This document shows positions 7,481-30,194 of a stretch of 64,000 bases of DNA, piece by piece. Position numbers and translations under genes: made by a program. Each line of letters opens with the position of its first letter. Positions within the stretch are counted from its first letter, which is position 1. The notes under the pieces are model-generated. The model ran no database searches and had not been told where the DNA came from. It saw nothing but the letters and a program-made list of their open reading frames with translations. The stretch covers positions 62,001 to 126,000 of IMG/VR virus record IMGVR_UViG_3300050821_013430. One strand, written 5' to 3'.

Positions 7481-8014
7481 CTAACTATTTAGAGCCTGAG
7501 CGACTTCGATCATCCGAGGATCGCCGGGTTTCAATTTTCCGTCCAATTGAGCATCATATACCCAAGCATTAGTGGGCCGGTGGTACTTGATAGTCTTCCC
7601 AGTGGCCAATCGGATCCTCTCCAGTAGCTCCGGCGGAATATGTTGGCCTTTGAAGATCACACGAACATTGTCAATCACCGCCTCGCCAGTTTCCCGATTG
7701 ACCTTGGCATCGACCACCATCTTAGAATCATGCGGCCAAGAATAGATCATTCCCAGGCGAACAACTGGATTGACCGCATACTCGGGGTCAAACTCGAGAA
7801 CTTCTTTACGGTCGTAGTCATCGTCTTCGGGCTGTCCAAACTGAGCAAACCAAGCCTCCACCACCGGCCAGACCCTTTCGTTCTTGGCTCGTTGGTCAGC
7901 TTTTCGCTGTTCTTCCTTGCGACGATCCTGTTCCCGCCAATCCTCATCGTCATCCCAGATTCCTGCAAGTTTGACGAACCGATCACATAAGCGTTGTAGT
8001 CGATCTAAATTCAT
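7481..8014 (-). CDS. Hypothetical protein, possible internal head protein
   Basis: Start reassigned to MNLDRLQRLCDRFVKLAG (8014), 6 nt after the late-promoter motif. Confidence 0.6.
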   Translation of the reverse strand: MNLDRLQRLCDRFVKLAGIWDDDEDWREQDRRKEEQRKADQRAKNERVWPVVEAWFAQFGQPEDDDYDRKEVLEFDPEYAVNPVVRLGMIYSWPHDSKMVVDAKVNRETGEAVIDNVRVIFKGQHIPPELLERIRLATGKTIKYHRPTNAWVYDAQLDGKLKPGDPRMIEVAQALNS

Positions 8015-9014
8015 GAGAAGATGCGAAAATATTAGCCTTTTGAGCGACTTCGTATTTACGAGGGAGGTAGATGATGGCATCGTGGTAGAGGTAGTTGGTG
8101 ATTTTAGAAAGCACACCATTTCCGCCATATTCAAGGGCATAGTGTTTTTTAATCAGACGAGGCTTCTTTTTATCAATGCCAAGTTCTTCGGCGAAAATAG
8201 CGCTAACTACGGAGAGAAATTCATTGGTACCACACAAAGAAAAATATACCTGAGGAACGGTTCTACCATTTTTTGGTTTACTAATGTAAAAACTACCATC
8301 ACCATCATTATAGCCACGAATAAAATGATGTCGCAATGAATGATTTATGATCCATTCTGGGAAGGTATAGATGAGACTTTTAGCAGGTACAATATTGAAT
8401 TTGGCCAGTTCATTGACCATTATTTCCGAAGTAATAGTAAAACTGCTGGCTAAGGAATTATTCCATTTTGGGTTACGTTTATTAGACTTCACCTCATATT
8501 GTCTAACTTTCGCATCTGATTTTAATAATTCCTTTATAAGAAGAAGATGCTGCTCATCATATCTAGCCAAACTGAGTTGTATTTCATAACGGAAATTACC
8601 ACTGGACGAAAGTCGTTTTTTGACGCATCCATCTGCTGCTAAAAATCCAGCCACGTAAAAAATCGCCTCATTTTCATTGGAAAAGAAATGATCATCACAA
8701 ATGCGTTTTATCTGCGGATTGAAATATAATCCAAACTTTTGCATATATCGTTTTATAGTGCCACAATCTACACCAAGTTTTCGTCCCACGGCCTTTAGAC
8801 TGCCGTACTCAGCATATGCTTGTTCTAATACTTCTTGTGTCAATAAAATATCTCGACGTGGTTTTACAATACAATCGATACCGCATATCTCGAAGGCTGT
8901 ATAGACGGTTATTGGATTTATACCATATTTTTCGGCTATTTTAGTAGCTGATCCAATGATTTCTAATTCTTGTTTTAATTGTTCGGGCGTTAAAATTTTG
9001 AGCAGTTTGTTCAT
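7983..9014 (-). CDS. LAGLIDADG homing endonuclease
   Basis: FYVAGFLAADG and FIRGYNDGDG motifs, N-terminal HTH repeats. Confidence 0.85.
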   Translation of the reverse strand: MNKLLKILTPEQLKQELEIIGSATKIAEKYGINPITVYTAFEICGIDCIVKPRRDILLTQEVLEQAYAEYGSLKAVGRKLGVDCGTIKRYMQKFGLYFNPQIKRICDDHFFSNENEAIFYVAGFLAADGCVKKRLSSSGNFRYEIQLSLARYDEQHLLLIKELLKSDAKVRQYEVKSNKRNPKWNNSLASSFTITSEIMVNELAKFNIVPAKSLIYTFPEWIINHSLRHHFIRGYNDGDGSFYISKPKNGRTVPQVYFSLCGTNEFLSVVSAIFAEELGIDKKKPRLIKKHYALEYGGNGVLSKITNYLYHDAIIYLPRKYEVAQKANIFASSHEFRSTTTLM

Positions 9015-12232: not shown

Positions 12233-13093
12233 TTATACCGAGTATTTCTTCTTTGCATCACCATACCCGATTTCCATCATTTTTTTGATCTTATGAGGGC
12301 TAAAATCCAAAATATTATCCACTAAATTGAAATCAGGCCTAATTACTTGTAATTTTACTAGCTTTTTATCGCTTACTCCGGCTGCGGCTAACTTATTGTA
12401 CATAATGGCCTTTTCTAAGTCATTGGACATAATTTTGTCAGATGATAAATCAATACTTCGCTTAAAAATGTCTAAAATATTAGGATTTTCAATGAAATTT
12501 TTGTTCCGAGTTTCAGGAGACGTCATAATGATATCAATTTCATCGGCATTTAGATCCAATGCCTCAGCAATTGGACTAATACTCTTGGTGCCACCATCAG
12601 CCCACCATTGATTTTTCATCCAAACAGGAGACAGTAAGCCAGGAAAAGAAGCAGAAGCAACAACTGCATCTATAAAATCATCATCAGTTTGAGAGAAGGT
12701 GGTGTATTTCCCAGAACAAAGAGAAACTGCGCCTACAATCACTTGTTTGCCAGAGGCACGAATTTTATCCAATGAAATATGAGTTTTGATTAATTTAGCC
12801 AATGGGGCGCTATCAAACACTGATTTTTCCCAAAGAGCGTGGAATTTGCCAAAGGGCTGCCAGCGTTGATATACCTGTTTGGTTGTCAATTTTTCCCAAA
12901 GAGAAGTTAAATCCTGAGCGGCTTGAATTTCTTGACCTGTTGGATACATAGCAAGAAGAGCGGCATTGATGGCTCCGACGCTGACGCCTAGGTAAGCGTC
13001 GTATTGTACTTGTAATTCTCCAAGCAAATATTTGAGGGCTCCGGCCTGAGACGCCCCTTTTGATCCGCCACCTGATAAAACAAGCGCCTTCAT
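12233..13093 (-). CDS. Patatin-like phospholipase
   Basis: LSGGGSKG, GVSVG nucleophile and ADGG motifs. Start at MKALVL with GGAG SD. Confidence 0.9.
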   Translation of the reverse strand: MKALVLSGGGSKGASQAGALKYLLGELQVQYDAYLGVSVGAINAALLAMYPTGQEIQAAQDLTSLWEKLTTKQVYQRWQPFGKFHALWEKSVFDSAPLAKLIKTHISLDKIRASGKQVIVGAVSLCSGKYTTFSQTDDDFIDAVVASASFPGLLSPVWMKNQWWADGGTKSISPIAEALDLNADEIDIIMTSPETRNKNFIENPNILDIFKRSIDLSSDKIMSNDLEKAIMYNKLAAAGVSDKKLVKLQVIRPDFNLVDNILDFSPHKIKKMMEIGYGDAKKKYSV

Positions 13094-13124
13094 ATATGTC
13101 TCCAAGTTTGACGTTTTATTATAT

Positions 13125-13985
13125 TCATTCATCACCCAACAGCAAATGCATTCTTTTTTCTTCACTATGTAAAGATAGATCAGCACGCTCCAATGTATCT
13201 ATTATCATTTTAGACAATTCTAATCCACTTCTCCAATCTTTTTTTCCATCAATCAATTGTAAAAACGTTTCAATCGAAGAAGCGAGCGGCAAAGTTCGAT
13301 CAATTTTTACCACTTTCCCATTATGTATCAGTTTGTCTTCTCGTATATCATCATATATAATCGTTTCTTTTCCTCCAAAAACCTCAAAATAACGACTTTT
13401 ATTTTGGGCTCCATTACCAATTTGAGCACTTACTCTGACTCCACCTATATTGAGGTGCAAATCAAATATCTCGCCCTGAGAATGCCACGAAGGCATTCGT
13501 GCCGCATAATCAATTGATGTTTGATTATTTAACAAAGCAAAACACATCGACAGATCGTGAGAACCATAATCAAATAAAGACGAATAATCTCGGAAGGGGC
13601 CGTTTCCATAGCCTCTGGTAAAAATACCATCAATTCGATCCCAAGACAGAACAATTTCTCGTAATTTGAGGAAGGCGGGAGCAAAAATATGTTGATGGTT
13701 GACCAAAATAGGAGCAGAAAACCTATCCAATATTTTTATCTCGTTTAGAGAAAGAGCCAATGGCTTTTCTACCATCACGGGTACATTACGCTCTAAAGCA
13801 TAATGAGCAATATCAATATGAGATTGTGGCGGAGTAGCGATAATCACCCCGTCTGGCTGCTCATCCAATAAAGACTTCCAATTATGTCTAGTTGCAATTT
13901 GCAAAGAGACATCAGGAAAATCAGCAAGAGTAGAGACATAATTTCTACCCCAATGACCATTACCAATAAGTAAGATATTACTCAT
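13125..13985 (-). CDS. Gfo/Idh/MocA-family oxidoreductase
   Basis: IGNGHWG Rossmann motif, IATPPQSH, VEKP. Confidence 0.85.
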   Translation of the reverse strand: MSNILLIGNGHWGRNYVSTLADFPDVSLQIATRHNWKSLLDEQPDGVIIATPPQSHIDIAHYALERNVPVMVEKPLALSLNEIKILDRFSAPILVNHQHIFAPAFLKLREIVLSWDRIDGIFTRGYGNGPFRDYSSLFDYGSHDLSMCFALLNNQTSIDYAARMPSWHSQGEIFDLHLNIGGVRVSAQIGNGAQNKSRYFEVFGGKETIIYDDIREDKLIHNGKVVKIDRTLPLASSIETFLQLIDGKKDWRSGLELSKMIIDTLERADLSLHSEEKRMHLLLGDE

Positions 13986-14928
13986 AACGATTTCTGTATT
14001 CTAGATACCAATTTACACACTCAAAAAGACCTCTATCAAAATCGAATATAGGCCTCCATCCTAATGCCTTGATTTTAGAGCAATCCACCGAATACCTAAA
14101 ATCGTGGCCGGTCCGGTCTTTGATAAAATCAATGGCCGGATTTTCGACCTTCAGGATTTGACTGATTCGCTTCACGACTTCCAAATTGGTCAGCTCCACC
14201 CCAGAGCCAATGTTGTAGGTCTCATTGGCGGGAGCCTTTTCCACGATCTTCATAATGGCCGAGCAGTTGTCCTTGACATAGAGCCACTCCCGCATCTGCT
14301 TGCCCTCTCCGTGAATAGGGATCGGCTTGCCATCCATAATCGATGTGATGACCTTCGGGACCAAGTTGCGAGGGGGTTGGCGGGGCCCGTAGTTATTGCA
14401 GCAGCGCGTGATGTTGTATGGTAGTCCGTGAGTTTGATTAGCGGCGACCACCAACATTTCAGCACAGGCTTTGGAGGCGGAGTATGGGTTTCTGGGTTTG
14501 AGGGGTGAGTGTTCGGTCCAGGACGGATCACCGATCTTGAGTTGGCCGTATATCTCATCGGTTGATATCATAATGAACCGCTCCACTTGATACTTGAGCG
14601 CCAGATCTACCATCACCTGGGTACCCACGATGTTGGAATGAACGAAAGGCTTGGCGCTTCGGATCGAGTCATCCACGAAACTCTCGGCTGCTCCGTGAAT
14701 GACGATGTTGGGCCGTTCCAGAGCAAATACGTTGTCCATAAAAATCTCATCTGCAATATCACCCATATAGAAAGTGTGGCCAGTATTGCGATAGATGTTC
14801 TTGAGGTTGTAGGGGGCGATGATTTTATCAACGCTCGAGAATTTGTAGTCCAGGCGATCATCAAAGACCTTCCTAATAAAGTTGCTGAAGATAAACCCGG
14901 CCGAGCCGGTCACGAGCACGCGTTTCAT
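13978..14928 (-). CDS. rfbB: dTDP-glucose 4,6-dehydratase
   Basis: VTGSAGFI, AAESFVDDS, ISTDEIYG, PYSASKA, NNYGP, DRTGHDFRY. Confidence 0.9.
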   Translation of the reverse strand: MKRVLVTGSAGFIFSNFIRKVFDDRLDYKFSSVDKIIAPYNLKNIYRNTGHTFYMGDIADEIFMDNVFALERPNIVIHGAAESFVDDSIRSAKPFVHSNIVGTQVMVDLALKYQVERFIMISTDEIYGQLKIGDPSWTEHSPLKPRNPYSASKACAEMLVVAANQTHGLPYNITRCCNNYGPRQPPRNLVPKVITSIMDGKPIPIHGEGKQMREWLYVKDNCSAIMKIVEKAPANETYNIGSGVELTNLEVVKRISQILKVENPAIDFIKDRTGHDFRYSVDCSKIKALGWRPIFDFDRGLFECVNWYLEYRNRYE

Positions 14929-15836
14929 TGGCCATCCCATCCTTGCAAAGCGTCCTCAATGGATTTAAGGTAGGACGCGTGATGTTGATTGAAGCCCCAT
15001 TGATAGTAATCCGGCACCGCCTGGCACACCTTCGTTAGAGCATCTTCGGAGGTCATCTTGTTGCATCCGCGAAGAACGGCGTAGGCAAAATGCGGACTTC
15101 GTGAGGCACCAACGTGGCAATGGAGGTAAATGGGCCGATCCGAATGCTGTTGAGCAAACTTGACTGCCTGCCTAACGTAATCGGCAGGAAAAGGATTGCC
15201 ATCATCCTGAACCGGCAGTTCCAAGAGGTTATCGATCTGCTTGTCCTTGTCCGTATGACCATCTACGTTGATCACGGATCCGATACTGAAATCTCTGGTC
15301 AGGTGTTCCCAGTCCTTTTGGTCGCAAATGTTGCCACCCACCAGGAGATGGGGCGCTACCCAATACCTTGCCATCGTTGGATTAGTAGGACTAACGGTAT
15401 TGATGTAGGTTTCTGCCACCCCCACGTTCAGTTCGAGTAGTTGTCGGATAAGATAATCGGCTTTGCCAGCCATTACCTCCGGCTTGCTAAAAAGATGAGT
15501 AGCACCCGCGACTATCATATTGGCGTTATTCTGCTGGATGCCGGAGAAAGTGATGACTGGTATGGATAAGTTCTTGCTTTTCAACCAGTTGAGCAGGTCA
15601 ATGCCATTACCCTGCGGCATATCGTGATCCAAAATGATGACGTCAATCTTGACGCTGCTGATGATAGCCGCGGCTGCGAGGGCACCCGGCACCACGCTGA
15701 ATTGCACCTCGGTCTGGGGCCCAAAAATGCTGGCGAAATGCTCGATAACGCCCTTTTGGCAGTGGAGATCGTCCTCACAAATTAGGACGTGCTTCTGGGG
15801 ATATTTGAGCCGGTTGATATGTCTGAACTGGAACAT
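14925..15836 (-). CDS. Response-regulator receiver domain fused to a dual-specificity phosphatase
   Basis: VLICEDD, ILDHDMPQGNG, ITFSG and SKP receiver motifs, then LHCHVGASRS (CX5R). Confidence 0.8.
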   Translation of the reverse strand: MFQFRHINRLKYPQKHVLICEDDLHCQKGVIEHFASIFGPQTEVQFSVVPGALAAAAIISSVKIDVIILDHDMPQGNGIDLLNWLKSKNLSIPVITFSGIQQNNANMIVAGATHLFSKPEVMAGKADYLIRQLLELNVGVAETYINTVSPTNPTMARYWVAPHLLVGGNICDQKDWEHLTRDFSIGSVINVDGHTDKDKQIDNLLELPVQDDGNPFPADYVRQAVKFAQQHSDRPIYLHCHVGASRSPHFAYAVLRGCNKMTSEDALTKVCQAVPDYYQWGFNQHHASYLKSIEDALQGWDGQ

Positions 15837-17261
15837 TTATGAACCCTTCCTTGTTAGCTCTTCGATTGCGGGAAACCACGGCATGCCGCGATCGATACCA
15901 CCACACGACTGACATCTGGCCCCGCCTATCTTGATGCCATTGAAACTGCCGCTATATTTGGGGTCTTCGATCCAAGGGCCATCGCTACAAGTGCAGGTCA
16001 TGTTCTCGCAATATCGCTGCACCTTCAGCTCCGGCAAAGGCACAATGAAAGTGGGATACCTGACATTTTTGAAATGCTGATACCACTGCTGCTGACACTT
16101 TTCGATTATTGAGTCCGCAAAGTTCCAGGCGAGGATCAATAACACATCCGGCTTGCGTTCCAAAATGGCTTGTGAGGTATAGATGAGAATATGCTTACCG
16201 GGAGTAAATGTTCCTTGTTTCAAGGGAGCATCATCTACCGCGAAATCAATCCATTCTTCTTTGATCCCAAGAGCATACATTAAGGTCGTAGCTTTAGCCG
16301 GGGCGCCGTAGATGGCGATGGATTTATCCTGATCTCTCAGATCTCGGAGTTTTTCACGAAGTTCTAGTCCTAGATACTTGATATTGTGGGCCAGTTGCTT
16401 GACCTTCTTCTCAATGTCTTGTTCTTGTTGCGGCAAATCACCTAGTCCGGCGCTTAATGCACCACGATACCATCTACCAAGGCCGAAATCTTCTTGGCAA
16501 CGAACAAAAACTCGAATTGATCCCCCGTGATTTGGAATTCTTTCGACATCAAACAAATCCAAACCGTGGCCGGTAAAAAATGGGCGCAAGGGCCCTACGG
16601 TATGGTAAGAGCTGTGCTCGTGGTAAATAGTGTCGAATAAGGTATGGTCGCACACATCAGCGAAATAGGACACCTCGAACACGAATACTCCCTGCGGAGC
16701 CAGCAGCTTCTTGACACCCTTGGTAAAGTCAACCAGGTCGGGGCAATGGGCAAACACGTTGTTGGCCACGATCAAATCAAACTGACCGTGTTCCTTGAGC
16801 ATCTTATCGGCATAGGCCTCGGTGAAAAACTCCGTGATGGTCTCGATGCCCTTCTTGTTAGCTTCGTCCGCGATGTTCCGGGCTGGATCGATGCCCATGA
16901 CCTTCATTCCCAGATCCTTGAAGTGCTGCAACATCACTCCGTCGTTGCTGGCAATTTCCAGGATTTTGCTGCCAGGCTTCAGATCAAACTTTTCGACCAT
17001 TGACACTGCATACTTACGAAAATGCTCCACATTGACGGGGGAGGTACCAGCCACATAATGGTAGTGGCGAAAAATCCGCTCCGGATCAATACTCTGATTG
17101 AGCTGGTAGTGCCCACAGGAGGCGCAACAACACACTTGTAGCGGAAAAAGGTCCTGGGGGCTGGGAGAGGACAAAAATTCGTTAGCAAGCGGCGTGGAGC
17201 CTAAATCTAATACCGGTGCGCCGAGGGGGCCCTTGCACAATCTGCACTTATCAGTCTTCAT
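15837..17261 (-). CDS. NDP-hexose C-methyltransferase (SAM-dependent)
   Basis: CRLC..LGSTPLAN..CASC, EIASNDG, NNVFAH, YHEH, HGGSIR, YGAPAKA, LAWNF. Confidence 0.9.
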   Translation of the reverse strand: MKTDKCRLCKGPLGAPVLDLGSTPLANEFLSSPSPQDLFPLQVCCCASCGHYQLNQSIDPERIFRHYHYVAGTSPVNVEHFRKYAVSMVEKFDLKPGSKILEIASNDGVMLQHFKDLGMKVMGIDPARNIADEANKKGIETITEFFTEAYADKMLKEHGQFDLIVANNVFAHCPDLVDFTKGVKKLLAPQGVFVFEVSYFADVCDHTLFDTIYHEHSSYHTVGPLRPFFTGHGLDLFDVERIPNHGGSIRVFVRCQEDFGLGRWYRGALSAGLGDLPQQEQDIEKKVKQLAHNIKYLGLELREKLRDLRDQDKSIAIYGAPAKATTLMYALGIKEEWIDFAVDDAPLKQGTFTPGKHILIYTSQAILERKPDVLLILAWNFADSIIEKCQQQWYQHFKNVRYPTFIVPLPELKVQRYCENMTCTCSDGPWIEDPKYSGSFNGIKIGGARCQSCGGIDRGMPWFPAIEELTRKGS

Positions 17262-17690
17262 CTAAAACTCCTCTCGCACTAAATCGGCTTCGTGATGTTC
17301 GTGGTCCTTGATGCCGTGTCCCAGGGAAATCAACACCGTATCCTCCAGGAATACCGTGCGATGCACGTAGTATGGGCGAGTGAAAACCATCTCACCCGCC
17401 TTGACGACGATCGGCTCTCGATTAGCCTTTTCGGGTGATGTATCCACCGATCGCTCGTAGTATTCCATCGATCCCGATATGACGAAAAGGTAGTGCCAGT
17501 TCTCGTGATGCCAATGATTGCTACGTACCGATCCTGCCTTACTGGTAATGATAGCCACGCTGGTAATAGGTGATAAGAGTAGATTTTGGATGACACCAGT
17601 AGCATTCACAAAGGGCGCGTCCAATGGTACAAGAATATCTGCCGGAAACTCTCCACGACTAACCAAATCTCCATATTCTCTATTGTTCAT
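17262..17690 (-). CDS. Cupin-fold sugar epimerase/isomerase
   Basis: RSNHWH..WHYLFVISG..YVH cupin motifs, within the sugar operon. Confidence 0.7.
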   Translation of the reverse strand: MNNREYGDLVSRGEFPADILVPLDAPFVNATGVIQNLLLSPITSVAIITSKAGSVRSNHWHHENWHYLFVISGSMEYYERSVDTSPEKANREPIVVKAGEMVFTRPYYVHRTVFLEDTVLISLGHGIKDHEHHEADLVREEF

Positions 17691-18652
17691 CTTGCATCCT
17701 TATCTGACTTTACATACCAGTCTATTGTCTTTTTCAGCCCTTCTTGCAGTTCTGTCGTTGCCTCCCAATCCAATAGCTCCTTGGCTCGGCTTGTGTCCAA
17801 AAGCCTTTTTGGCTGACCATCTGAAACACTGCCATCGAATACTACCCTGCCCTGATACTCCGTTAGCTCTTTGATCAGGTGGGTCAGGTTCTTGATGCTA
17901 ATATCTTGTCCTACTCCCAGATTGATTGGTAAGTCGTTGTCAAAACGACTTGCGATTGCTTTGACAAGAACCTCAGCGGTGTCGCCAGCATAGAGAAACT
18001 CCCGAGTGGCATTGCCAGTACCCCAGCATTTGACCTCGGGTGCATTGGTATGCTTGGCATCTATGAACTTACGGATCAATGCCGGAATGACGTGGCTGTT
18101 GGTTAGATCGAAGTGATCGTACGGACCGTACATATTTACTGGAATTAGATGTGCCCCTTTGATACCATATTGGACTCGATATGTTTGCCCCAACATCATC
18201 AGCGTTCGTTTTGCTTGTGCGTATGGGAAATTGGTTTCTTCAGCGGCACCGTTCCAAATATTATCCTCCTTGAAAGGAACTGGACAGTATTTAGGATAGG
18301 CACACACTGAACCTAATGAATAGACATAAGGAACCTTCATCGTTCGTGCTGCTTCATAGACATTGAGTGCCATTTGAGTGTTATCTCGCAGGAAATCAGC
18401 CGGACTGTTCTTATTGGCTAGAATCCCGCCGCACTTCGCGGCCATATGCAGAATAGCAGTAGGTTGATATTGTCGAATGGCCCACCAAATATCGGCACCG
18501 TGATCGCATTCATTGCCGATATTTTGCGACGTTAGAATGTCCAAGTCTTTACTCTTTGGCGCCCAATATTCGATTTTAGCAGCATTCAATAACGGCAAAA
18601 GATGATGTCCGAGAAATCCATTGCCTCCCGTAATCAAAATGCGTTCTTTCAT
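17687..18652 (-). CDS. fcl: GDP-L-fucose synthase-like NDP-sugar epimerase/reductase
   Basis: AAKCGGILAN, GSVCAYPK, YAQAK, NMYGPYD, SHVIPALIRK, WGTGNATREFLY. Confidence 0.8.
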   Translation of the reverse strand: MKERILITGGNGFLGHHLLPLLNAAKIEYWAPKSKDLDILTSQNIGNECDHGADIWWAIRQYQPTAILHMAAKCGGILANKNSPADFLRDNTQMALNVYEAARTMKVPYVYSLGSVCAYPKYCPVPFKEDNIWNGAAEETNFPYAQAKRTLMMLGQTYRVQYGIKGAHLIPVNMYGPYDHFDLTNSHVIPALIRKFIDAKHTNAPEVKCWGTGNATREFLYAGDTAEVLVKAIASRFDNDLPINLGVGQDISIKNLTHLIKELTEYQGRVVFDGSVSDGQPKRLLDTSRAKELLDWEATTELQEGLKKTIDWYVKSDKDAR

Positions 18653-19440
18653 CGTTTCCTCTTGAATAAGTCTATCGTCTTTCTGATACCAGCATCCAAG
18701 GATGTTTGAGCTTCACAAATGAGTGATTTATTCGTAATCACCAAGGAACTGCCACTTTTGGTGCCTCGTACTATCTGGCAGCCGGTATGTTTAGAGACCA
18801 GCTCCGCTACCTCATATATCGAGTTCCACTGCAATGTGCTGGCGTCAAATACGCCTTTATATTCAAATGATAAGTGTAGGGCCCTACAAATATCGTCAAT
18901 ATGAATAAACTGTCTTTTTTCTTGACCATCGGTCATCATTCGTATGATATCATTAGACAATGCTTGATGAACGAAATCAGCAACTACATGGCTCTTGACA
19001 GACTGCGGCTCATAGGCCCCATAAACGTTCCAAAACCGTACCACCCGGCCCCCATTGAGTTGTGTCCAAACCTCACCAAGCCGCTTTAGGACGCCGTAAA
19101 CGGTATCGCAGTCCTCGGCGAGCTGACTGGAAACGAAAACGAAAGGGATATCGATCAGCTGATCCATCGAGTTGGTTAGAATTCTGATATTCCACTCAAG
19201 TTGTTCTTTTTGAGTATTAGGATCATAGAGGTAGTTGGCTCCACCAACTTTGAAGGCTAAAAAATAAACGCGATCAATATTAACCAGGGGTAAGGTGAAA
19301 AATCTGCAATCCTCATGCTCATTTCTGATGATATCGTATTCAATAACATTTTCTCCAAGGTCGCGAAGATAATGGCATAGGTATCGACCGACGAAACCAG
19401 AAGAGCCAAGAACAAGGTTATTCATCTTACTTATGCACAA
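18649..19440 (-). CDS. NAD-dependent epimerase/dehydratase
   Basis: GSSGFVG, YGVLK, NVYG, RQFIHIDD. Confidence 0.85.
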   Translation of the reverse strand: MCISKMNNLVLGSSGFVGRYLCHYLRDLGENVIEYDIIRNEHEDCRFFTLPLVNIDRVYFLAFKVGGANYLYDPNTQKEQLEWNIRILTNSMDQLIDIPFVFVSSQLAEDCDTVYGVLKRLGEVWTQLNGGRVVRFWNVYGAYEPQSVKSHVVADFVHQALSNDIIRMMTDGQEKRQFIHIDDICRALHLSFEYKGVFDASTLQWNSIYEVAELVSKHTGCQIVRGTKSGSSLVITNKSLICEAQTSLDAGIRKTIDLFKRKR

Positions 19441-19441
19441 T

Positions 19442-20275
19442 TTACGGACTTATTGCAATATCGTATCTTGCACTGAGATAACTTTGAACAAGTATCATAT
19501 TACTATAAGCAAGAATGCTGTTATATATGAGCACCTCAACTATTTTACCATTGAGGAAATGGCCTGACATATATTGATTATCGGCGCCCAACCAAACACC
19601 ATCTGTACCAGCACCTACGGAACCAGCTCCTACTGTGCCTGTTAGATTTGGTGTAGTTTTGCTGATACCAATCGCTGAACTTGCGCCATCATATTCGCCA
19701 CGAAATACTTCTGGGTATCCAGTTGCCGATATTGAGGTAGTAAGATTGGTGCCTCCTGCCAAAATAGAATATACCCCATCATTATTGTATAGCCAAGGGT
19801 TTGTTACCGTATCACCACCAACAAATATCTCAGCGCCACCTCCGACGGTTCCATCATCATTAGCAACAACAAAAATGGTATATGGTTGTGCTACTGGTGA
19901 AGCCCAAGTTCCAGTAGACTTCATATATTGAGATAAAGAATCCCTAAAACTAACTGATGGAAAACCGGCATACATATTATCTGAGGCGTTGAATGTTGGA
20001 TTAGCGCTACCACCCGCTCCCACCATATTTTTATTTGAATCACCGGTGCCGCTCTGGTCTGCCCAGCCCGTAACCTGATTACCGGACAATGTAATACCCA
20101 TATCGCTTCGCAACCACAACTGCAGTCCTGAAATGCTGGTTGGTGAGAAAAGTGTTGGTAGCGTTGTAGGCACATACTCAGTGCCATTGAACTGCAATAC
20201 TTGCCCGGTGATTGGTGGCACTGATGAAACTGGAATACCCTGAATCGCTGTGACTCGTTTTTTAACATCGGACAT
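19442..20275 (-). CDS. Virion protein with LamG/concanavalin-A-like domain
   Basis: LQLWLRSD..VTGWADQSG..LNGKIVEVLIYN, with N-terminal AIQG module. Confidence 0.7.
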   Translation of the reverse strand: MSDVKKRVTAIQGIPVSSVPPITGQVLQFNGTEYVPTTLPTLFSPTSISGLQLWLRSDMGITLSGNQVTGWADQSGTGDSNKNMVGAGGSANPTFNASDNMYAGFPSVSFRDSLSQYMKSTGTWASPVAQPYTIFVVANDDGTVGGGAEIFVGGDTVTNPWLYNNDGVYSILAGGTNLTTSISATGYPEVFRGEYDGASSAIGISKTTPNLTGTVGAGSVGAGTDGVWLGADNQYMSGHFLNGKIVEVLIYNSILAYSNMILVQSYLSARYDIAISP

Positions 20276-20286
20276 GTTGTCTCCTT

Positions 20287-21153
20287 TTATACCTTACTAA
20301 GTATATTCCAAATACTACCATTAAATATAACAGTAATTCCGCCAAAATTAGTATTAATTACATAAGTAGAAGCGGCATCAATATTAACTCCACCTCCTGA
20401 TACTGTTAGATTATTAGTGGATGCAATACCAACGGAATCTTTAATTATATAAATATCTCCTGCCGATGGAGATGGCGGTAGTGTAATAGTAAATATTCCT
20501 GATGTCGTATCACCAAGAATAATATAATCATAAGCAGTTGAACGACCATTATTTATGGTATAATCTGATGTAATATTAACTATTTGACTAAATCGTAGTC
20601 CCGTACTATTAAATCTAATATTTTTGCCTGTCAAACCTATTTGGGCAACATCAGGATTAGTGGATGCGTTAAAAGCATCTAATACAATTTCTTGTGCATT
20701 ATCATGCCCATAACCAGTTGTTAAATAGATAGATGCCTGTCCTCCACCATTTTGTGCGCCAGCATCTAGTTGAATATTATTACCACCGGCAGAACTTGAG
20801 GTCGGGGCACAACCACTAAAAATATTAATCGGTCCATTGCCACCGCCTCCAACTTGATCAGTAGATATTGTTAAACCGCTTGTACCATTTGTGCTTTGTA
20901 TTAAAACAGCGCTAGCATCTACAGTACCACTGTTGCCAGTTAAACCTATAACTATTGGATTTGGATATGTTCCAGATAAATCACCTCCGGCGGGCCCATC
21001 TGGTATTCCACTTGGTGTTGGCAATGGTTTAGATTCCCACTCATCATTTGTATTAATCCAAGTCAATACATAACCATCTTCACTCGCGCCTAGTATTTCT
21101 CGTTTAACCTGATTTCCTTGAATTGCATAAACGATTTTTCCGACATCAGACAT
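20287..21153 (-). CDS. Virion fibre/adaptor protein
   Basis: AIQG..DGYVLTW module, GGDLSGTYPNP, C-terminal domain shared with 630..2309. Confidence 0.65.
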   Translation of the reverse strand: MSDVGKIVYAIQGNQVKREILGASEDGYVLTWINTNDEWESKPLPTPSGIPDGPAGGDLSGTYPNPIVIGLTGNSGTVDASAVLIQSTNGTSGLTISTDQVGGGGNGPINIFSGCAPTSSSAGGNNIQLDAGAQNGGGQASIYLTTGYGHDNAQEIVLDAFNASTNPDVAQIGLTGKNIRFNSTGLRFSQIVNITSDYTINNGRSTAYDYIILGDTTSGIFTITLPPSPSAGDIYIIKDSVGIASTNNLTVSGGGVNIDAASTYVINTNFGGITVIFNGSIWNILSKV

Positions 21154-21176
21154 TTTAATCTCCTTATGTTAAATAT

Positions 21177-21707
21177 TTATTTATGCGCATCAATCGCAAG
21201 TTCAAACCATACATTGTGGATTGAAATACGATCTACTTTATTAAATCCAACTGATGAAATAAGTTTTTTCAAACTTTTTTCTGTATAACCATAGAAATGA
21301 CTATCAGGTATAGAGTTTTGTTGGTGCATTTCATCTTGCTCTCCCCAAATCAATCTAGAATATTGATATTGGGCTTCGCCTTCGCTTGCTAACCAGAGTG
21401 GCATTGCCTTTGCCATATCTGGTACTGATAAACGCAATCGACCATTTGGCTGTAACACACGATGACATTCTTGCATTACAAATATAGCCTTCAATCGTAA
21501 TAGATGTTCGAAAAAATCACCCATCCAAATCTCTTCGATTGAATTATCAGATTCTCGTATACCTTGAGATATATCATAGCATTCAAAAAATCCATTGTTA
21601 GTATCAAAATCTTTGCAAATATCAATGCTTTTCCACCCGATATGATCCAAGGAGATCACATTCAGTGCTGCAAGGCCGCTTCTTCCTGATCCAAGATTGA
21701 GTTTCAT
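21177..21707 (-). CDS. Class I SAM-dependent methyltransferase
   Basis: MKLNLGSG, FFEHL, ECHRVLQPNG..SVPD. TAATG coupling to the upstream glycosyltransferase. Confidence 0.85.
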   Translation of the reverse strand: MKLNLGSGRSGLAALNVISLDHIGWKSIDICKDFDTNNGFFECYDISQGIRESDNSIEEIWMGDFFEHLLRLKAIFVMQECHRVLQPNGRLRLSVPDMAKAMPLWLASEGEAQYQYSRLIWGEQDEMHQQNSIPDSHFYGYTEKSLKKLISSVGFNKVDRISIHNVWFELAIDAHK

Positions 21708-23797
21708 TATATTTGTGCAACTTGAAGAATAACACCACGCATCTCGCGCAAACTCCAATCATTGACGGGATCACTGAAATTATTGGCTTGTTTGCGACGC
21801 CAAATAGGATAGTTAGACATATGATGTCTAATCCTTCGTGCGTGCGGCATCACAAATCTCGGATTGATAATATACACCTTATTGTCTTTATCTACAATCC
21901 AAGTGAAACCGAGTTTCTTGACCAAGATATCAGAAAAAACATTATCCTGACACAAATGTGCTCCGTCCAACTCTTCATCCCAGCCATTGACCTTAAGAGC
22001 GGCTTCTATCTTAAGGCTCTCGTTTTTAGCATTAAAAGCTTGATGATCTCCAGGACCATATGGCATAAATAATTTAGTATCAGCATTACCCATACTATCT
22101 AATGACAGGGCTTCTGGATCTTGATCGAATGGCTCCTTGAAAATACTCCACATTAAATGGTTTAACTTACCTGTAATAATATCACTCACAAATAAATCAG
22201 TATCTTCATTTTGATAAGGAGTAAAATCAGGATGTAATTCCGGTAAAGATTTATACTGGTGAGGACACATATAGCCCATATTTTCGGCTAAATTAATGTT
22301 GTGAAACTTAATATGTTTTTCCACACAATCTGTGGGTAAATAGGTATAATCAGTGATCATTAACACCAATGAAGCAGAGGCGTTTACAAAACCAGTATTA
22401 GTGGTATGTGCTAAACAGCTAATAGGAAACACATTTTTTATTGGTTCGACATGTTTAACTATGAAATCATATTTTTTGCTTTCTTGTGCTACAATATCTT
22501 TCCGATGCTTATAAATACCATCTACCAATATCAGTTCAAAGTTCTTGAAAGTTTGTCGCTCTAAACTTTTGAATACTATATCTAAACCGCCTGGGCGCAT
22601 CGTTGGCATAATAATAGAAATAGCTGGTGTCTTACTGCCACTGATATTTGGTATAGATAATGTATTACTGTGTTTTGGATTGTCTTCAATCAATTTACAC
22701 ATCTTATTAGCAATATTAGTCCAAAGATATTTTTGAGCAAACAATTTACATTTATCTCGGGCATTATTGGCAAAGGTTATATCAGTTAAAGCCTTTACTA
22801 CTCCCGCTGCGTACTCATTCAATTTTGTGGCTACTGGCATTTCAGTCATCAAACAGCCACTATGTCGATAGATACCACCAATACAATCAGCGGAACTAAT
22901 AGCTGGAATAGCGCCAGCCGCGTGAGCTTGCATTATACTCAAACTAAATCCCTCCGAAAACGCAACGGTATCTACTGGATAAAGTAGAACGGATGCTTCG
23001 CTCATTTGTCGTTTCATTTCTTCAACACTAACAGAGCCAATTTGTTCCACACCCATATTCTTCATTCGTTTTATTGCTTCACGGCAATAACGCAATCTAT
23101 GACCCAGTTCCGTAACGTGAGGATGATCGGTGGTAGAGTTAGGCTCAATTTTTAGTACAGGGCCTTCTTGAAAATGGTAGAATATTTTTAGACTAGCTTC
23201 TGGAACCTGTTCTTTGATTTTGGGAAAAGCCTGTAATGCCAAATGCAAACCACGATCTGCCGATGAGCAGAAAATCATCCGCCCTGGCACCTTTTTATTG
23301 TCTTCGTACCAAGAAGGATCACATCCTAATGCCAGCGTTTGCCATTTTTCGGGTTTGGGGGCCTGGCGCTGTAAATGTTTAGTGTGTTGATCACAAACTC
23401 CTAACCATAGATCTACATAATCATCATATCCTGACTGACAGTAAGTAAAATCATTAAGAAACTGCCAACAAATACGAAATGGTTTCTCATTGACACCACG
23501 AAGAGCGTCTGGTTCATTAATAGAGATCACTGCATCAAAACTCTCATCAATAACAGTATGCCGTTCAATGAAATTATATAGTTTGCATCCCTGCCAAATA
23601 TCTGGTTTATTATTAGGTTGGGCATTCTTGGTAAACATATGGATTTCGTGCCCAAGTTTTTGTAGCTCGCTGCTGATAATGCAAAAACTAAGATCTGTAC
23701 CAGTTAGTCCCCTACCACTTGTCCAAATATTATCGAACCAAAAATCAAGAGGGCGCGTCGATAAACTCCATTCGCCAAGTATGACTGCAATTTTCAT
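21707..23797 (-). CDS. Bifunctional glycosyltransferase (GT4-like + GT2-like)
   Basis: SSADRGL..FSEGFSLSIMQA (GT-B), then ISIIMPT..FELILVDG (GT-A). Confidence 0.85.
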   Translation of the reverse strand: MKIAVILGEWSLSTRPLDFWFDNIWTSGRGLTGTDLSFCIISSELQKLGHEIHMFTKNAQPNNKPDIWQGCKLYNFIERHTVIDESFDAVISINEPDALRGVNEKPFRICWQFLNDFTYCQSGYDDYVDLWLGVCDQHTKHLQRQAPKPEKWQTLALGCDPSWYEDNKKVPGRMIFCSSADRGLHLALQAFPKIKEQVPEASLKIFYHFQEGPVLKIEPNSTTDHPHVTELGHRLRYCREAIKRMKNMGVEQIGSVSVEEMKRQMSEASVLLYPVDTVAFSEGFSLSIMQAHAAGAIPAISSADCIGGIYRHSGCLMTEMPVATKLNEYAAGVVKALTDITFANNARDKCKLFAQKYLWTNIANKMCKLIEDNPKHSNTLSIPNISGSKTPAISIIMPTMRPGGLDIVFKSLERQTFKNFELILVDGIYKHRKDIVAQESKKYDFIVKHVEPIKNVFPISCLAHTTNTGFVNASASLVLMITDYTYLPTDCVEKHIKFHNINLAENMGYMCPHQYKSLPELHPDFTPYQNEDTDLFVSDIITGKLNHLMWSIFKEPFDQDPEALSLDSMGNADTKLFMPYGPGDHQAFNAKNESLKIEAALKVNGWDEELDGAHLCQDNVFSDILVKKLGFTWIVDKDNKVYIINPRFVMPHARRIRHHMSNYPIWRRKQANNFSDPVNDWSLREMRGVILQVAQI

Positions 23798-29372: not shown

Positions 29373-29418
29373 GTCAAAATGTCGAATTATTCCTATGGCC
29401 CATCTGTTGAAATTTGAG

Positions 29419-30150: not shown

Positions 30151-30194
30151 AGTATTATGTTCCTCTAATCATTTTGTTCTGACTATGCGTATAA

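What the first reader, a model, noticed from the sequence alone, without database searches (positions are those of the whole stretch)
14925..15836. Receiver-domain/phosphatase fusion inside the sugar operon
An intact receiver domain (EDD, phospho-acceptor D, S, K) is joined to a CX5R phosphatase and translationally coupled between the methyltransferase and rfbB. No kinase is present in the window, so it may read host two-component signals to gate phosphatase activity. Alternatively it acts on sugar phosphates.
Basis: partly seen in the sequence, partly recalled or inferred. Interest (0 to 1): 0.6.

Follow-up and report, generated by a model that had tools for sequence, protein, structure and literature searches.

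The report
Phage receiver–phosphatase fusion in glycan operon
A 473-kb soil phage carries a real, conserved fusion of a bacterial-type signal receiver domain to a cysteine phosphatase inside its sugar-decoration gene cluster, with no kinase of its own; this is an undescribed but optional accessory module whose substrate is still unknown.

Summary
Window 14925-15836 (-) is an intact 303-aa ORF with an N-terminal receiver (REC) carrying all five catalytic residues and a C-terminal classical dual-specificity phosphatase (DSP: D211, C240-x5-R246). It abuts the C-methyltransferase (TAA|ATG) and overlaps the RfbB-like gene.

It is not an assembly artefact. About 40 full-length homologues (48-63 % identity) come from independent metagenomes, mostly on 70-470 kb phage contigs.

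The complete 472.7-kb phage genome has no HisKA, Hpt, Ser/Thr/Tyr kinase or APH kinase. Its single HATPase_c hit is an rIIA-like gene.

The link to glycan synthesis is strong. Synteny is conserved (cupin, C-MT, REC(-DSP), RfbB, GFO). REC or paralogous DSP modules are also fused to glycosyltransferases and methyltransferases elsewhere.

The module is accessory. Syntenic operons exist without it, and the closest REC relative (71 %) has no DSP. The window's DSP belongs to a clade that is almost always tethered behind REC.

The REC is atypical: His at D+1 and Asp at D+2 (0.64 % and 1.99 % in true receivers), and no aromatic K-3 switch.

The most likely role is a host-phosphodonor-dependent regulatory or phospho-processing accessory of phage glycosylation. 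Gating and substrate are untested. I rate it a new variant of a known kind, of moderate interest.

The parts
14925..15836 (-). Whole REC-DSP ORF (303 aa plus stop codon)
   Evidence: ORF list; Pfam REC + DSPc; 100 % self-match in the genome; about 40 full-length homologues.
15795..15836 (-). Conserved N-terminal extension (residues 1-14, MxFxFRHxNRLxYP) that precedes strand beta-1 of REC. It is also kept in REC-only relatives.
   Evidence: R9 is present in 97/112 and P13 in 103/112 REC instances. It is not covered by any solved receiver, since model ranges start at residue 13-14. pLDDT is 87-97.
15429..15836 (-). Receiver (REC) domain, residues 1-136. Key residues: E21/D22 metal pair, D70 acceptor (15627-15629), H71, D72, P74 (D+4), G78 (D+8), S98 (T), G99 (T+1), N103-N104, K118.
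   Evidence: PF00072 scores 45.8 bits, above the 30.2 cut-off. Z 18.3 to RR468/PrrA. Residue census over 112 instances. Comparison with the receiver statistics of PMC12632262.
14928..15422 (-). Dual-specificity phosphatase domain, residues 139-303. General acid D211 (15204-15206); P-loop H239-C240-H-V-G-A-S-R246-S247 (15096-15122).
   Evidence: PF00782 scores 31 bits. DUSP10/MKP5 is the best PDB sequence match, E 1.9e-6. Z 17.3-17.6 to PTPMT1, DUSP28, DUSP23, DUSP14 and DUSP8. D211 is present in 134/139, C240 in 134/138 and R246 in 137/138 instances. It belongs to the H-type clade, support 0.997.
15837..17261 (-). Upstream neighbour: sugar C-methyltransferase (Methyltransf_13/23/14). Its stop codon abuts the REC-DSP ATG.
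   Evidence: Pfam; junction sequence. In L035 the REC is fused to this type of methyltransferase, directly after the cupin gene.
13978..14940 (-). Downstream neighbour: RfbB-like dTDP-glucose 4,6-dehydratase, which overlaps the end of REC-DSP.
   Evidence: TIGR01181 scores 342 bits (cut-off 365); Pfam; overlap seen in the sequence.
12233..26283 (-). The co-directional glycan locus that holds the fusion: GT2-GT4-GT1 (23794-26283), GT1 (21707-23797), small MT (21177-21758), two fibre/virion proteins (19442-21153), two SDR epimerases (17687-19440), cupin (17262-17690), C-MT, REC-DSP, RfbB, GFO oxidoreductase (13125-13985), patatin (12233-13186).
   Evidence: Pfam and PHROGs scans. The same order is seen in L007, L008/10/11, L012/13, L014-17 and L039.

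Best explanation
The ORF is a genuine two-domain protein found in a lineage of huge, uncultured phages; this one comes from soil. It is a receiver domain with a complete phospho-aspartate pocket, tethered by a 3-17-residue linker to a classical Cys-based dual-specificity phosphatase.

It is an optional accessory module of a phage glycan-synthesis locus. That locus makes a C-methylated 6-deoxyhexose from host dTDP-glucose, encodes multi-domain glycosyltransferases, and lies beside tail-fibre genes.

Proposed mechanism (inferred, not shown): D70 of the REC takes a phosphoryl group from a host-derived donor, either a small acyl-phosphate such as acetyl phosphate or a host HK/Hpt. The phosphorylation state of REC sets the activity of whichever enzyme it is tethered to or docks with. 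In this phage that enzyme is the H-type DSP. The DSP then removes a phosphomonoester from a component of the glycosylation process. This would couple glycan decoration to the host's physiological state.

Shown: the architecture, intact catalytic residues, absence of any phage kinase, conserved synteny, and modular fusions.

Inferred: the phosphodonor, the gating, and the substrate (phosphoprotein versus phosphorylated sugar, glycan or lipid).
For: - Real and conserved: 40 full-length homologues at 48-63 % identity, from JGI, ENA, Logan and NCBI sources, on contigs up to 472 kb. There are 57 invariant columns, including every catalytic residue.
- Both pockets are under selection in every architecture. 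REC: D70 in 111/111, E21 in 105/108, D22 in 108/108, S/T98 in 109/110, K118 in 105/106. DSP: C240 in 134/138, R246 in 137/138, D211 in 134/139.
- It is a true receiver by the Bourret-lab criteria: five catalytic residues, Pro at D+4, Gly at D+8 and a small T+1 residue.
- No kinase in the complete genome, and no RmlA. Both precursors and phosphodonors must therefore come from the host.
- Synteny: REC(-DSP) sits between cupin/C-MT and RfbB/GFO in at least 8 distinct phage lineages whose orthologues are only 37-70 % identical.
- Typical regulator behaviour: the same REC module is fused to DSP, DSP-DSP, a C-MT, another MT, or a GT, or stands alone in the slot.
- REC is tied to this DSP type: 37 of 43 members of the H-type DSP clade (support 0.997) lie directly behind a REC. 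At least one of the 5 free ones, P0047, is a split copy that follows REC-DSP(Q) in L012.
- The two-domain AF2 model is confident as a whole: pTM 0.88, pLDDT 96.6.
- Accessory status fits a regulator: syntenic operons L042, L044, L046 and L065 lack it.
Against: - No experiment and no RNA data exist; no RNA run holds the sequence.
- The docking test of the two halves gave no verdict.
- The linker tolerates 3-17 residues, so rigid coupling is not required.
- The REC pocket is unusual for an HK-driven switch. His at D+1 occurs in 94/112 instances against 0.64 % of receivers. Asp at D+2 occurs in 105/112 against 1.99 %. The K-3 position is not aromatic, although Tyr or Phe fills it in 86 % of receivers.
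- REC-only loci show that the DSP is dispensable.
- The GT- and MT-fused DSPs are paralogues outside the window's DSP clade.
- In one 371-kb phage the gene lies beside AAA, GIY-YIG, HAD-PNKP and Rnl1 rather than sugar genes.
Confidence: 0.5

Rival explanations
1. Both domains are catalysts, and REC is not a switch. With its D70-x-D72 pair, REC works like a HAD or 'cRec' phosphoesterase through a transient acyl-phosphate intermediate. The DSP is a second phosphatase. Together they strip phosphate(s) from a phosphorylated sugar, glycan, lipid-linked or nucleotide intermediate. This would be analogous to the glycosyltransferase + phosphatase pairs of sucrose-6-P and trehalose-6-P synthesis (my knowledge, not tested here).
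For: - D+2 = Asp and D+1 = His are nearly invariant here but rare in receivers.
- The Asp at +2 occupies the place of the HAD general acid (established knowledge of HAD motif I and the CheY/HAD active-site similarity).
- The genome's own cREC protein carries the same LDHD motif.
- The aromatic allosteric switch is missing.
- REC and DSP are each independently fused to GTs and MTs, and DSPs are often duplicated in tandem.
- No kinase is present in the phage.
Against: - The domain scores as a classical receiver (45.8 bits) and fails the cREC model (20.2 bits, cut-off 27).
- It has a small T+1 residue, Pro at D+4 and Gly at D+8, like true switches.
- The 6-deoxyhexose pathway encoded here needs no phosphatase (pathway knowledge).
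- Syntenic operons without REC or DSP show that no core step depends on them.
- There is no cap or substrate-binding insert of the kind HAD enzymes have (fold = plain CheY).
Confidence: 0.2
2. It is a host-directed effector that is only co-expressed with the glycan genes. The DSP dephosphorylates host phosphoproteins, for example the tyrosine-phosphorylated machinery that controls capsule or EPS synthesis (the Wzc/Wzb theme). The REC acts as a phosphate sink or decoy for a host phosphorelay. The outcome is that host surface-polysaccharide regulation is shut down and dTDP-glucose is freed for the phage pathway.
For: - The P-loop HCxxGxSRS, the general-acid spacing and the best sequence and structure matches are those of protein-directed DUSPs: MKP5/DUSP10, DUSP1/8 and VH1.
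- The phage lacks RmlA and depends on host dTDP-glucose.
- REC-only variants could work as sinks on their own.
- An Asp at D+2 could speed autodephosphorylation (inference).
- The phage carries two further CX5R phosphatases, which suggests a wider phosphatase-based takeover repertoire.
Against: - The host is unknown and no target has been identified.
- Repeated covalent fusion of the paralogous DSPs inside GT2-TPR-DSP-DSP-GT4 polypeptides, and to methyltransferases, points to action in cis on the glycan machinery rather than on host signalling.
- The REC alpha-1 region is well conserved across phages that probably infect different hosts, which is unexpected if it docked to diverse host kinases.
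Confidence: 0.2
3. It works on nucleic-acid or nucleotide ends (RNA repair or NAD/ADPr conflict, as proposed for cRec). The sugar-operon position would then be secondary.
For: - In the 371-kb phage contig L005 the gene lies next to GIY-YIG, HAD-PNKP and T4 Rnl1-type RNA ligase.
- There is a weak sub-threshold match to cREC_REC.
- Some DSP-fold enzymes are RNA 5'-phosphatases (knowledge).
Against: - Only one lineage shows this context, against at least 8 with the sugar operon.
- The P-loop is not the CTHGxNR type of RNA triphosphatases (the motif is from knowledge).
- The genome already has a separate true cREC protein elsewhere.
Confidence: 0.05
4. It is a chance ORF, or a chimera made by mis-assembly.
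For: None was found.
Against: The same architecture and order appear in about 40 independently assembled sequences from many samples. An identical copy lies on a second contig (L009). E-values reach 1e-124 to 1e-180.
Confidence: 0.01

Closest known systems
Response regulators with enzymatic output domains (CheB methylesterase, PleD/WspR GGDEF, RpfG HD-GYP, REC-PP2C phosphatases)
   Same: An N-terminal CheY-like receiver with all five catalytic residues is tethered to an enzyme. The REC module is recombined with several different outputs.
   Different: The output is a Cys-based DUSP-fold phosphatase. I found this combination in no solved structure, no large Atlas cluster and no paper. It is encoded by a phage with no HK or Hpt. 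It has an unusual D+1 His and D+2 Asp and lacks the aromatic K-3 residue.
cRec (cyclic-phosphate-processing Rec, PF20274) of jumbo phages, Iyer et al. 2021, PMC7824862
   Same: Both are phage-borne receiver-like domains that are never paired with a histidine kinase. They share the LDHD...G.G.D motif with the genome's own cREC protein.
   Different: This REC passes the classical PF00072 model (45.8 bits) and fails PF20274 (20.2 bits, cut-off 27). hhalign to the genome's cREC gives only 69 % probability over 63 columns. Its context is glycan synthesis, not NAD/ADPr or RNA ligases, apart from one locus.
Classical dual-specificity phosphatases (MKP5/DUSP10, DUSP1/8, DUSP23, DUSP28, vaccinia VH1) and PTPMT1
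   Same: The fold matches (Z 17.3-17.6). The HCxxGxSRS P-loop is present, with the general-acid Asp 29 residues upstream. The C-terminal GFxxH..Y..SIE segment resembles the DUSP 'PNxGFxxQL' region.
   Different: Sequence identity is only 15-26 %. There is an extra N-terminal strand with the conserved motif AExYxN. It is viral and tethered to REC. The structural scores are tied between protein-directed DUSPs and the lipid phosphatase PTPMT1, so they do not reveal the substrate class.
Glycosyltransferase + phosphatase two-step systems (sucrose-6-P synthase/phosphatase, trehalose-6-P synthase/phosphatase) and Wzb/Wzc tyrosine-phosphatase control of polysaccharide synthesis (comparison from my own knowledge)
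   Same: A phosphatase is embedded in, or fused to, glycan-synthesis enzymes. Paralogous DSPs sit inside GT2-TPR-DSP-DSP-GT4 proteins.
   Different: The known systems use HAD or LMW-PTP/PHP phosphatases, not a DUSP fold. No phosphorylated acceptor and no BY-kinase is identifiable here. The window's DSP clade is not itself fused to GTs.

Membership tests
Receiver domain (PF00072, true receiver in the sense of Bourret and co-workers, PMC12632262) | (beta-alpha)5 CheY fold | tested here: met
   AF2 model pLDDT 96.6. Z 18.3, rmsd 1.7-1.8 A over 117 residues to RR468/PrrA. Pfam 45.8 bits, above the 30.2 cut-off.
Receiver domain (PF00072, true receiver in the sense of Bourret and co-workers, PMC12632262) | Five catalytic residues: DD pair, D, T/S, K | tested here: met
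   E21/D22, D70, S98 and K118 are invariant in 20 homologues and present in at least 97 % of 112 instances. Definition taken.
Receiver domain (PF00072, true receiver in the sense of Bourret and co-workers, PMC12632262) | Accessory marks of phospho-active receivers: Pro at D+4, Gly at D+8, small residue at T+1 | tested here: met
   P74 in 101/112, G78 in 103/112, G99 in 103/112. For comparison, receivers have 88 %, 97 % and 74 %.
Receiver domain (PF00072, true receiver in the sense of Bourret and co-workers, PMC12632262) | Y-T coupling: aromatic residue at K-3 | tested here: not met
   Position 115 is Leu here and L/K/V/H/R across the family. Tyr or Phe fills it in 86 % of receivers. This feature is common in receivers but does not define them.
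Two-component system (HK/Hpt + RR) | A cognate histidine kinase or Hpt encoded with it | tested here: not met
   There is no HisKA or Hpt in the complete 472.7-kb genome. The single HATPase_c hit is rIIA-like. Host kinases could not be examined because the host is unknown.
Two-component system (HK/Hpt + RR) | Asp phosphorylation changes the output | not testable with these tools
   This needs biochemistry. The docking job gave no verdict.
cRec (PF20274) | Match to the family model above its cut-off | tested here: not met
   20.2 bits against a cut-off of 27. By contrast, the genome's other REC (C1:414732-415304) scores 32.8 bits.
cRec (PF20274) | Operonic link to NAD/ADPr-processing or RNA-ligase genes | tested here: not met
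   Only L005/L006 show Rnl1/PNKP neighbours. At least 8 lineages show sugar genes instead.
Dual-specificity phosphatase (PF00782, Cys-based PTP superfamily) | HCX5R(S/T) P-loop with the catalytic Cys and Arg | tested here: met
   H239-C240-HVGAS-R246-S247. C is present in 134/138 and R in 137/138 instances.
Dual-specificity phosphatase (PF00782, Cys-based PTP superfamily) | General-acid Asp about 30 residues upstream of the Cys | tested here: met
   D211 lies 29 residues before C240 and is present in 134/139 instances.
Dual-specificity phosphatase (PF00782, Cys-based PTP superfamily) | DUSP fold and family-model score | tested here: inconclusive
   The fold is clearly met: Z 17.6 to PTPMT1 and 17.4 to DUSP28/23. 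The Pfam score of 31.0 is just below the 33.5 cut-off for this sequence, while paralogues reach 55-57 bits.
Dual-specificity phosphatase (PF00782, Cys-based PTP superfamily) | Phosphomonoesterase activity and substrate class | not testable with these tools
The structural neighbours are tied between protein and lipid phosphatases.
Glucan phosphatases (laforin/SEX4/LSF2) | Carbohydrate-binding module and the C-[TN]-A-G-[aliphatic]-G-R P-loop signature (signature from my knowledge) | tested here: not met
   No CBM was detected. The P-loop is CHVGASR or CQMGGSR.
HAD phosphatases | DxD motif I on a Rossmannoid HAD fold with squiggle/flap and cap (features from my knowledge) | tested here: not met
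   A D70-H-D72 motif is present. However, the fold is plain CheY, and no HAD structure appears among the best matches. The resemblance is confined to the active site.

The most novel reading that the evidence does not exclude
This could be a phage-specific branch of the receiver superfamily, marked by a D-H-D pocket, no aromatic switch and a conserved N-terminal arm. It would have left histidine-kinase signalling altogether and would work in one of two ways. Either it is a kinase-independent sensor of host acyl-phosphate or energy state, or it is a HAD-like phospho-Asp enzyme. In either case it would be plugged interchangeably into phosphatases, methyltransferases and glycosyltransferases to control or complete the glycan decoration of huge-phage virions. 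That would be the first viral 'one-protein two-component' control of glycosylation, and a bridge between classical receivers and the hypothetical cRec enzymes.
Probability: 0.2. Interest if true: 0.8.

Novelty: new variant of a known kind. Interest (0 to 1): 0.58.

Why it matters
Receiver domains are the archetypal bacterial signalling switch. Finding a conserved, catalytically complete receiver family in phages that encode no kinase raises a question: what phosphorylates it, and what does a virus learn from that signal? Here the receiver is tethered to a Cys phosphatase, and in relatives to methyl- and glycosyltransferases.

If the receiver reads a host metabolite or phosphorelay, this would be a simple and testable case of a virus adjusting its glycan decoration to host physiology. 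If it is instead a catalyst, it would give experimental footing to the still hypothetical idea that some phage Rec domains are phosphoesterases.

It also flags a DUSP-fold clade linked to glycan assembly, for which no substrate is known. The protein is small, soluble-looking and confidently modelled, so all of this can be tested directly with standard biochemistry.

Tried and rejected
- Cultured-phage database: no DNA or protein match, so no annotated relative exists there.
- Word-based search with the DSP half alone: blank. That tool is insensitive for short, diverged queries. The exhaustive search did find 66 free DSPs among the listed hits.
- ESM Atlas, by shape and by features: only ordinary response regulators, and no REC-DSP cluster of 50 or more members.
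- Complex prediction of REC (1-136) against DSP (139-303): 'no answer', score 0.00, controls not run. This is not evidence either way.
- GTDB genome scan: one REC-only relative (58 %) on a 20-kb contig of a 'Methylobacter' MAG. The contig is full of small unknown ORFs plus an HTH gene and shares nothing else with this phage. It is probably viral or mobile DNA, so I did not use it as a host call. The other six hits are ordinary receivers at 22-33 % identity.
- Promoter and terminator scan of 11-27 kb: promoter-like sites are no more frequent than in shuffles (34 against 38.3), so it is uninformative.
- Sequencing runs: four soil-metagenome DNA runs, one of them probably the source, and no RNA run.
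- Literature: no paper combines a receiver domain, a dual-specificity phosphatase and phage, or a DSP with glycosyltransferase architecture.
- The idea that the HATPase_c hit might be a hidden kinase was rejected. It is homologous to a gene next to rIIB in L005 and is itself followed by an rIIB homologue.
- The idea that the DSP is a core sugar-pathway enzyme was rejected. Syntenic operons lack it and close REC relatives have no DSP.
- The glucan-phosphatase and HAD memberships were rejected (see the membership tests).
Full report

Yes. Window 14925-15836 on the minus strand is an uninterrupted 303-codon ORF.

- Pfam finds a receiver domain at residues 17-120 (PF00072, E 7.7e-12, 45.8 bits, cut-off 30.2).
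- Pfam also finds a dual-specificity phosphatase catalytic domain at residues 178-271 (PF00782, E 2.4e-7, 31.0 bits, just under the 33.5 cut-off).
- The stop codon of the upstream C-methyltransferase is followed directly by the ATG (TAA|ATG), with an AAGGAAGG stretch 9 nt upstream.
- The RfbB-like gene downstream starts inside the last codons of the ORF, either at an ATGA overlap at 14928 or at an ATG at 14940.

An AlphaFold2 model built on a 70-sequence alignment is very confident (mean pLDDT 96.6, pTM 0.88). It superposes on canonical receivers at Z 18.3 (rmsd 1.7-1.8 A over 117 residues; RR468, PrrA). It superposes on DUSP-fold enzymes at Z 17.3-17.6 (PTPMT1, DUSP28, DUSP23, DUSP14, DUSP8; Foldseek). 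By sequence, the closest solved phosphatase is MKP5/DUSP10 (E 1.9e-6), and the closest receivers are ordinary response regulators.

**2. Where it sits**

The window is bases 62001-126000 of a 472,749-bp IMG/VR virus record that CheckV rates 100 % complete. The only public runs that hold the sequence are soil metagenomes, and none is RNA.

The gene lies in a long co-directional block on the minus strand, in this order:
- pectate-lyase-like and collagen-like tail-fibre genes;
- an 829-aa GT2-GT4-GT1 protein;
- a 696-aa GT1;
- a small methyltransferase;
- two fibre/virion proteins;
- two SDR epimerases/reductases;
- a cupin;
- a sugar C-methyltransferase (Methyltransf_13/23/14);
- REC-DSP;
- an RfbB-like 4,6-dehydratase (TIGR01181, 342 bits);
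- a GFO/IDH/MocA oxidoreductase;
- a patatin-like lipase.

The gene set predicts a C-methylated 6-deoxyhexose and its transfer by the phage's own glycosyltransferases. The phage has no glucose-1-phosphate nucleotidyltransferase, so it must start from host dTDP-glucose.

**3. No kinase anywhere in the phage**

HisKA, Hpt, Pkinase and APH models find nothing in the whole genome, while the same searches ring in the control genomes. The single HATPase_c hit is a 706-aa protein. It is homologous to a gene that precedes rIIB in a related phage, and it is itself followed by an rIIB homologue. It is therefore rIIA-like and not a sensor kinase.

**4. The fusion is a conserved family, not an artefact**

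A word-indexed search found 40 full-length homologues (48-63 % identity). They come from JGI, ENA, Logan and NCBI data and lie on contigs of up to 370-472 kb.

An exhaustive HMMER scan of 1.84 billion cluster representatives found only 1,085 hits at E<=1e-3 and 162 at E<=1e-10. The family is small.

Among the 191 proteins retrieved, the architectures are as follows:

| Architecture | Count |
|---|---|
| REC-DSP | 30 |
| REC-DSP-DSP | 11 |
| Free REC, about 140 aa | 62 |
| Free DSP, about 170 aa | 66 |
| DSP-DSP | 1 |
| DSP-REC | 1 |
| DSP (single or tandem) plus other domains | 15 |
| REC plus other domains | 4 |
| Ordinary four-receiver protein (P0181) | 1 |

Catalytic residues are kept in essentially every instance, whatever the architecture:
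- REC: D70 in 111/111, D22 in 108/108, S/T98 in 109/110, K118 in 105/106.
- DSP: C240 in 134/138, R246 in 137/138, D211 in 134/139.

Both pockets are therefore in use.

**5. What the modules are fused to**

I scanned 20 multidomain relatives. One of them, P0181, is an ordinary four-receiver protein. All 19 others carry glycosyltransferase and/or methyltransferase domains, or a second module of the family:
- DSP (often in tandem) embedded in GT2-(TPR)-DSP-DSP-GT4/GT1 proteins of 550-1,383 aa: P0053, P0059, P0074, P0085, P0086, P0092, P0124, P0141, P0165, P0167, P0171, P0183.
- DSP + methyltransferase: P0080, P0178, and L020:1979-3346.
- REC + methyltransferase: P0048, P0049.
- REC + glycosyltransferase: P0172.
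- DSP-REC in reversed order: P0046.
- DSP-DSP: P0045.

P0048 is a REC fused to the methyltransferase that directly follows the cupin gene. It is the same slot as in the window, with the REC joined to its other neighbour.

**6. Synteny**

The order cupin, C-MT, REC(-DSP), RfbB, GFO recurs in at least eight distinct phage lineages whose orthologues are only 37-70 % identical: L007, L008/10/11, L012/13/38, L014, L015-17, L020, L035 and L039. Three more lineages have the REC beside glycosyltransferases only: L018, L021 and L036/37.

The variations are informative:
- L012 has REC-DSP followed by a free DSP.
- L014, L015-17 and L039 have REC only, with no DSP within 7-10 kb. L039 carries the closest REC of all (71 % identity, on a 353-kb contig).
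- One 371-kb phage (L005) places the gene beside an AAA protein, GIY-YIG, HAD-PNKP and T4-type RNA ligase instead.

All these loci were found through the REC itself, so I made an unbiased census through the C-methyltransferase. Of the 80 best viral loci, 4 carry the REC and 6 carry a family DSP (two of those only weakly, E about 5e-6). Clearly syntenic operons go straight from C-MT to RfbB, or hold only a homing endonuclease there: L042, L044, L046 and L065.

The module is therefore an optional accessory of the operon and not one of its core enzymes. The C-MT/RfbB junction is a variable insertion point.

**7. Two kinds of DSP**

A maximum-likelihood tree of 134 DSP instances separates an 'H-type' clade (P-loop HCHxGxSRSPH, support 0.997, 43 members) from the rest, which mostly have HCQMGGSRSPA.

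- 37 of the 43 H-type copies lie directly behind a REC: 26 as REC-DSP, and 11 within REC-DSP-DSP (10 in last position, 1 in the middle).
- At least one of the five free H-type copies, P0047, is a split version that follows REC-DSP(Q) in L012.
- All GT- or MT-fused DSPs fall outside this clade.

The window's DSP is H-type. This has two consequences. First, this DSP type has co-evolved with the REC tether, which is the best comparative argument for functional coupling between the two halves. Second, the Rosetta-stone link to glycosyltransferases is for paralogues (30-45 % identity) and carries over to the window's DSP only by family and by neighbourhood.

**8. The receiver is complete but odd**

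By the criteria of Bourret and co-workers, it is a true receiver and not a pseudo-receiver:

| Position | This family | True receivers |
|---|---|---|
| Five catalytic residues | all present | definition |
| D+4 = Pro | 101/112 | 88 % |
| D+8 = Gly | 103/112 | 97 % |
| T+1 = Gly here (Ala/Gly in receivers) | 103/112 | 74 % |

Their residue tables for true receivers also show how unusual the pocket is:

| Position | This family | True receivers |
|---|---|---|
| D+1 = His | 94/112 | 0.64 % |
| D+2 = Asp | 105/112 | 1.99 % |
| T+2 | Ile (89/112) | mostly Tyr, Arg, His, Lys or Phe |
| T+5/T+6 | invariant Asn-Asn | no figure looked up |
| K-3 aromatic switch | variable, mostly non-aromatic | Tyr or Phe in 86 % |

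A conserved 14-residue N-terminal arm (R9, P13) belongs to the REC module, and free RECs keep it too.

The D-x-D arrangement is that of HAD motif I, where the +2 Asp is the general acid (my knowledge). The genome's separate, bona fide cREC protein (PF20274, 32.8 bits, C1:414732-415304) has the same LDHD motif. The window's REC fails the cREC model (20.2 bits against a cut-off of 27) and aligns to that protein only weakly (hhalign probability 69 %). It therefore sits between classical receivers and the hypothetical cRec phosphoesterases that Iyer et al. proposed for jumbo phages (PMC7824862).

**9. Interpretation**

The parsimonious reading is that REC behaves here as receivers do everywhere: a phospho-Asp module recombined with different enzymatic outputs. 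In this phage lineage those outputs are all enzymes of one glycan-synthesis locus.

In the window, the output is an H-type DUSP. With no phage kinase, the phosphoryl group must come from the host. Given the small T+1 residue and the atypical pocket, a small acyl-phosphate donor is at least as likely as a host histidine kinase. The accessory distribution fits a regulator or modifier.

I cannot name the phosphatase's substrate:
- The P-loop and its nearest relatives are those of protein-directed DUSPs.
- The structural scores are tied with the lipid phosphatase PTPMT1.
- The paralogues' insertion between GT domains suggests action on the growing glycan or its acceptor.

I put 0.5 on this 'host-phosphodonor-dependent accessory of phage glycosylation' model. 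I put 0.2 on the rival in which REC itself is a HAD/cRec-like catalyst and the protein is a tandem phosphoesterase. I put 0.2 on a host-directed effector or phosphate-sink role. I put 0.05 on an RNA/nucleotide-end function, and essentially nothing on artefact.

**10. Novelty**

I found no description of a receiver-DUSP architecture in the searchable literature, in PDB or among large ESM-Atlas clusters. JGI's automatic names ('protein-tyrosine phosphatase/CheY-like chemotaxis protein') are the only prior annotation. I could not query InterPro architectures, so unrelated cellular REC-DSP fusions are not excluded.

The parts are well-known folds. What is new:
- the combination;
- its viral, kinase-less setting;
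- the distinctive D-H-D receiver branch;
- its modular embedding in a glycosylation locus.

That makes it a new variant of a known kind, with moderate interest that would rise sharply if the receiver proves to be kinase-independent or catalytic.

**11. Limits**

- Everything functional is inferred.
- There are no expression data.
- The host is unknown.
- The AF2 inter-domain geometry could not be inspected, because only pTM was returned.
- The docking test returned no verdict.
- The loci censuses are samples: 80 of at least 599 C-MT loci, and 150 of 1,085 family hits.

Noticed in passing
window 59882-60721 (-); also genome C1:289641-290255 (outside the window): The phage encodes two further CX5R phosphatases. 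One is a 279-aa Y_phosphatase2-type protein (31.5 bits, cut-off 27; motif HCIEGKDRTG). The other is a 205-aa protein with IHCDGGISRSS and weak DSPc / Rit1-DUSP-like matches.
   Followed up: partly
genome C1:414732-415304 (-), outside the window (locus L003:1330-1710): A stand-alone, bona fide cREC domain protein (PF20274, 32.8 bits, cut-off 27). It carries the same LDHD motif as the REC of the finding.
   Followed up: partly
window 13978-17690 compared with L007:5437-9883: This looks like a swapped cassette. Between the window's phage and the L007 phage the flanking genes are 81-94 % identical (patatin 94, epimerase 88, o130 81). C-MT, REC-DSP and RfbB are only 41, 60 and 44 % identical. The cupin-to-RfbB stretch has GC 0.49-0.51, against 0.37-0.39 in GFO, patatin and the 696-aa GT, and 0.453 genome-wide. 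This suggests diversifying exchange of the sugar-specifying core.
   Followed up: partly
L007:7151-8038, L039:9044-9997, L042:8259-9167 (the slot homologous to window ~15836): The C-MT/RfbB junction is a hot spot for homing-endonuclease-like insertions in relatives: DUF723/CapR/DUF4379 in two phages, and NUMOD3 + TnsA-like in a third. GIY-YIG and LAGLIDADG genes also pepper these operons.
   Followed up: partly
L007:3443-5437: The orthologue of the window's 321-aa epimerase (17687-18652) is 664 aa long in L007. It is interrupted by a Hint_2 intein-like insert between residues about 176 and 523.
   Followed up: no
window 12233-13186 (-): A patatin-like phospholipase (PF01734, 107.9 bits) closes the sugar operon. 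It keeps that position in L007, L008, L014 and L039. Its role next to glycan genes is unexplained.
   Followed up: no
genome C1:218310-221392 (-), outside the window: An rIIA-like GHKL ATPase (706 aa) is followed by an rIIB homologue. This is the genome's only HATPase_c hit, and it could be mistaken for a sensor kinase.
   Followed up: yes
window 15837-17261 (-), residues ~415-474: The window's C-methyltransferase is about 50-70 aa longer than its orthologues (398-430 aa). It has a Cys-rich C-terminal tail (…CENMTCTC…CQSCGG…) with no match. It may be a remnant of an inserted element or a zinc-binding add-on.
   Followed up: no
window 26359-37244 (-): Directly upstream of the glycan genes lie a pectate-lyase-like tailspike (685 aa), a collagen-repeat tail fibre (318 aa) and a 2,349-aa ORF. 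This would fit the glycan locus serving virion fibres, but I did not test it.
   Followed up: no
L027 (contig of a 'Methylobacter sp.' MAG, DATBQC010000625.1), 7995-8405: This is the only close relative in 185,579 species genomes: a REC-only gene (58 % identity). It lies on a 20-kb contig of small unknown ORFs plus an HTH and a DUF6166 gene, and shares nothing else with this phage. It is probably viral or mobile DNA binned into the MAG, and so at best a weak host hint.
   Followed up: partly
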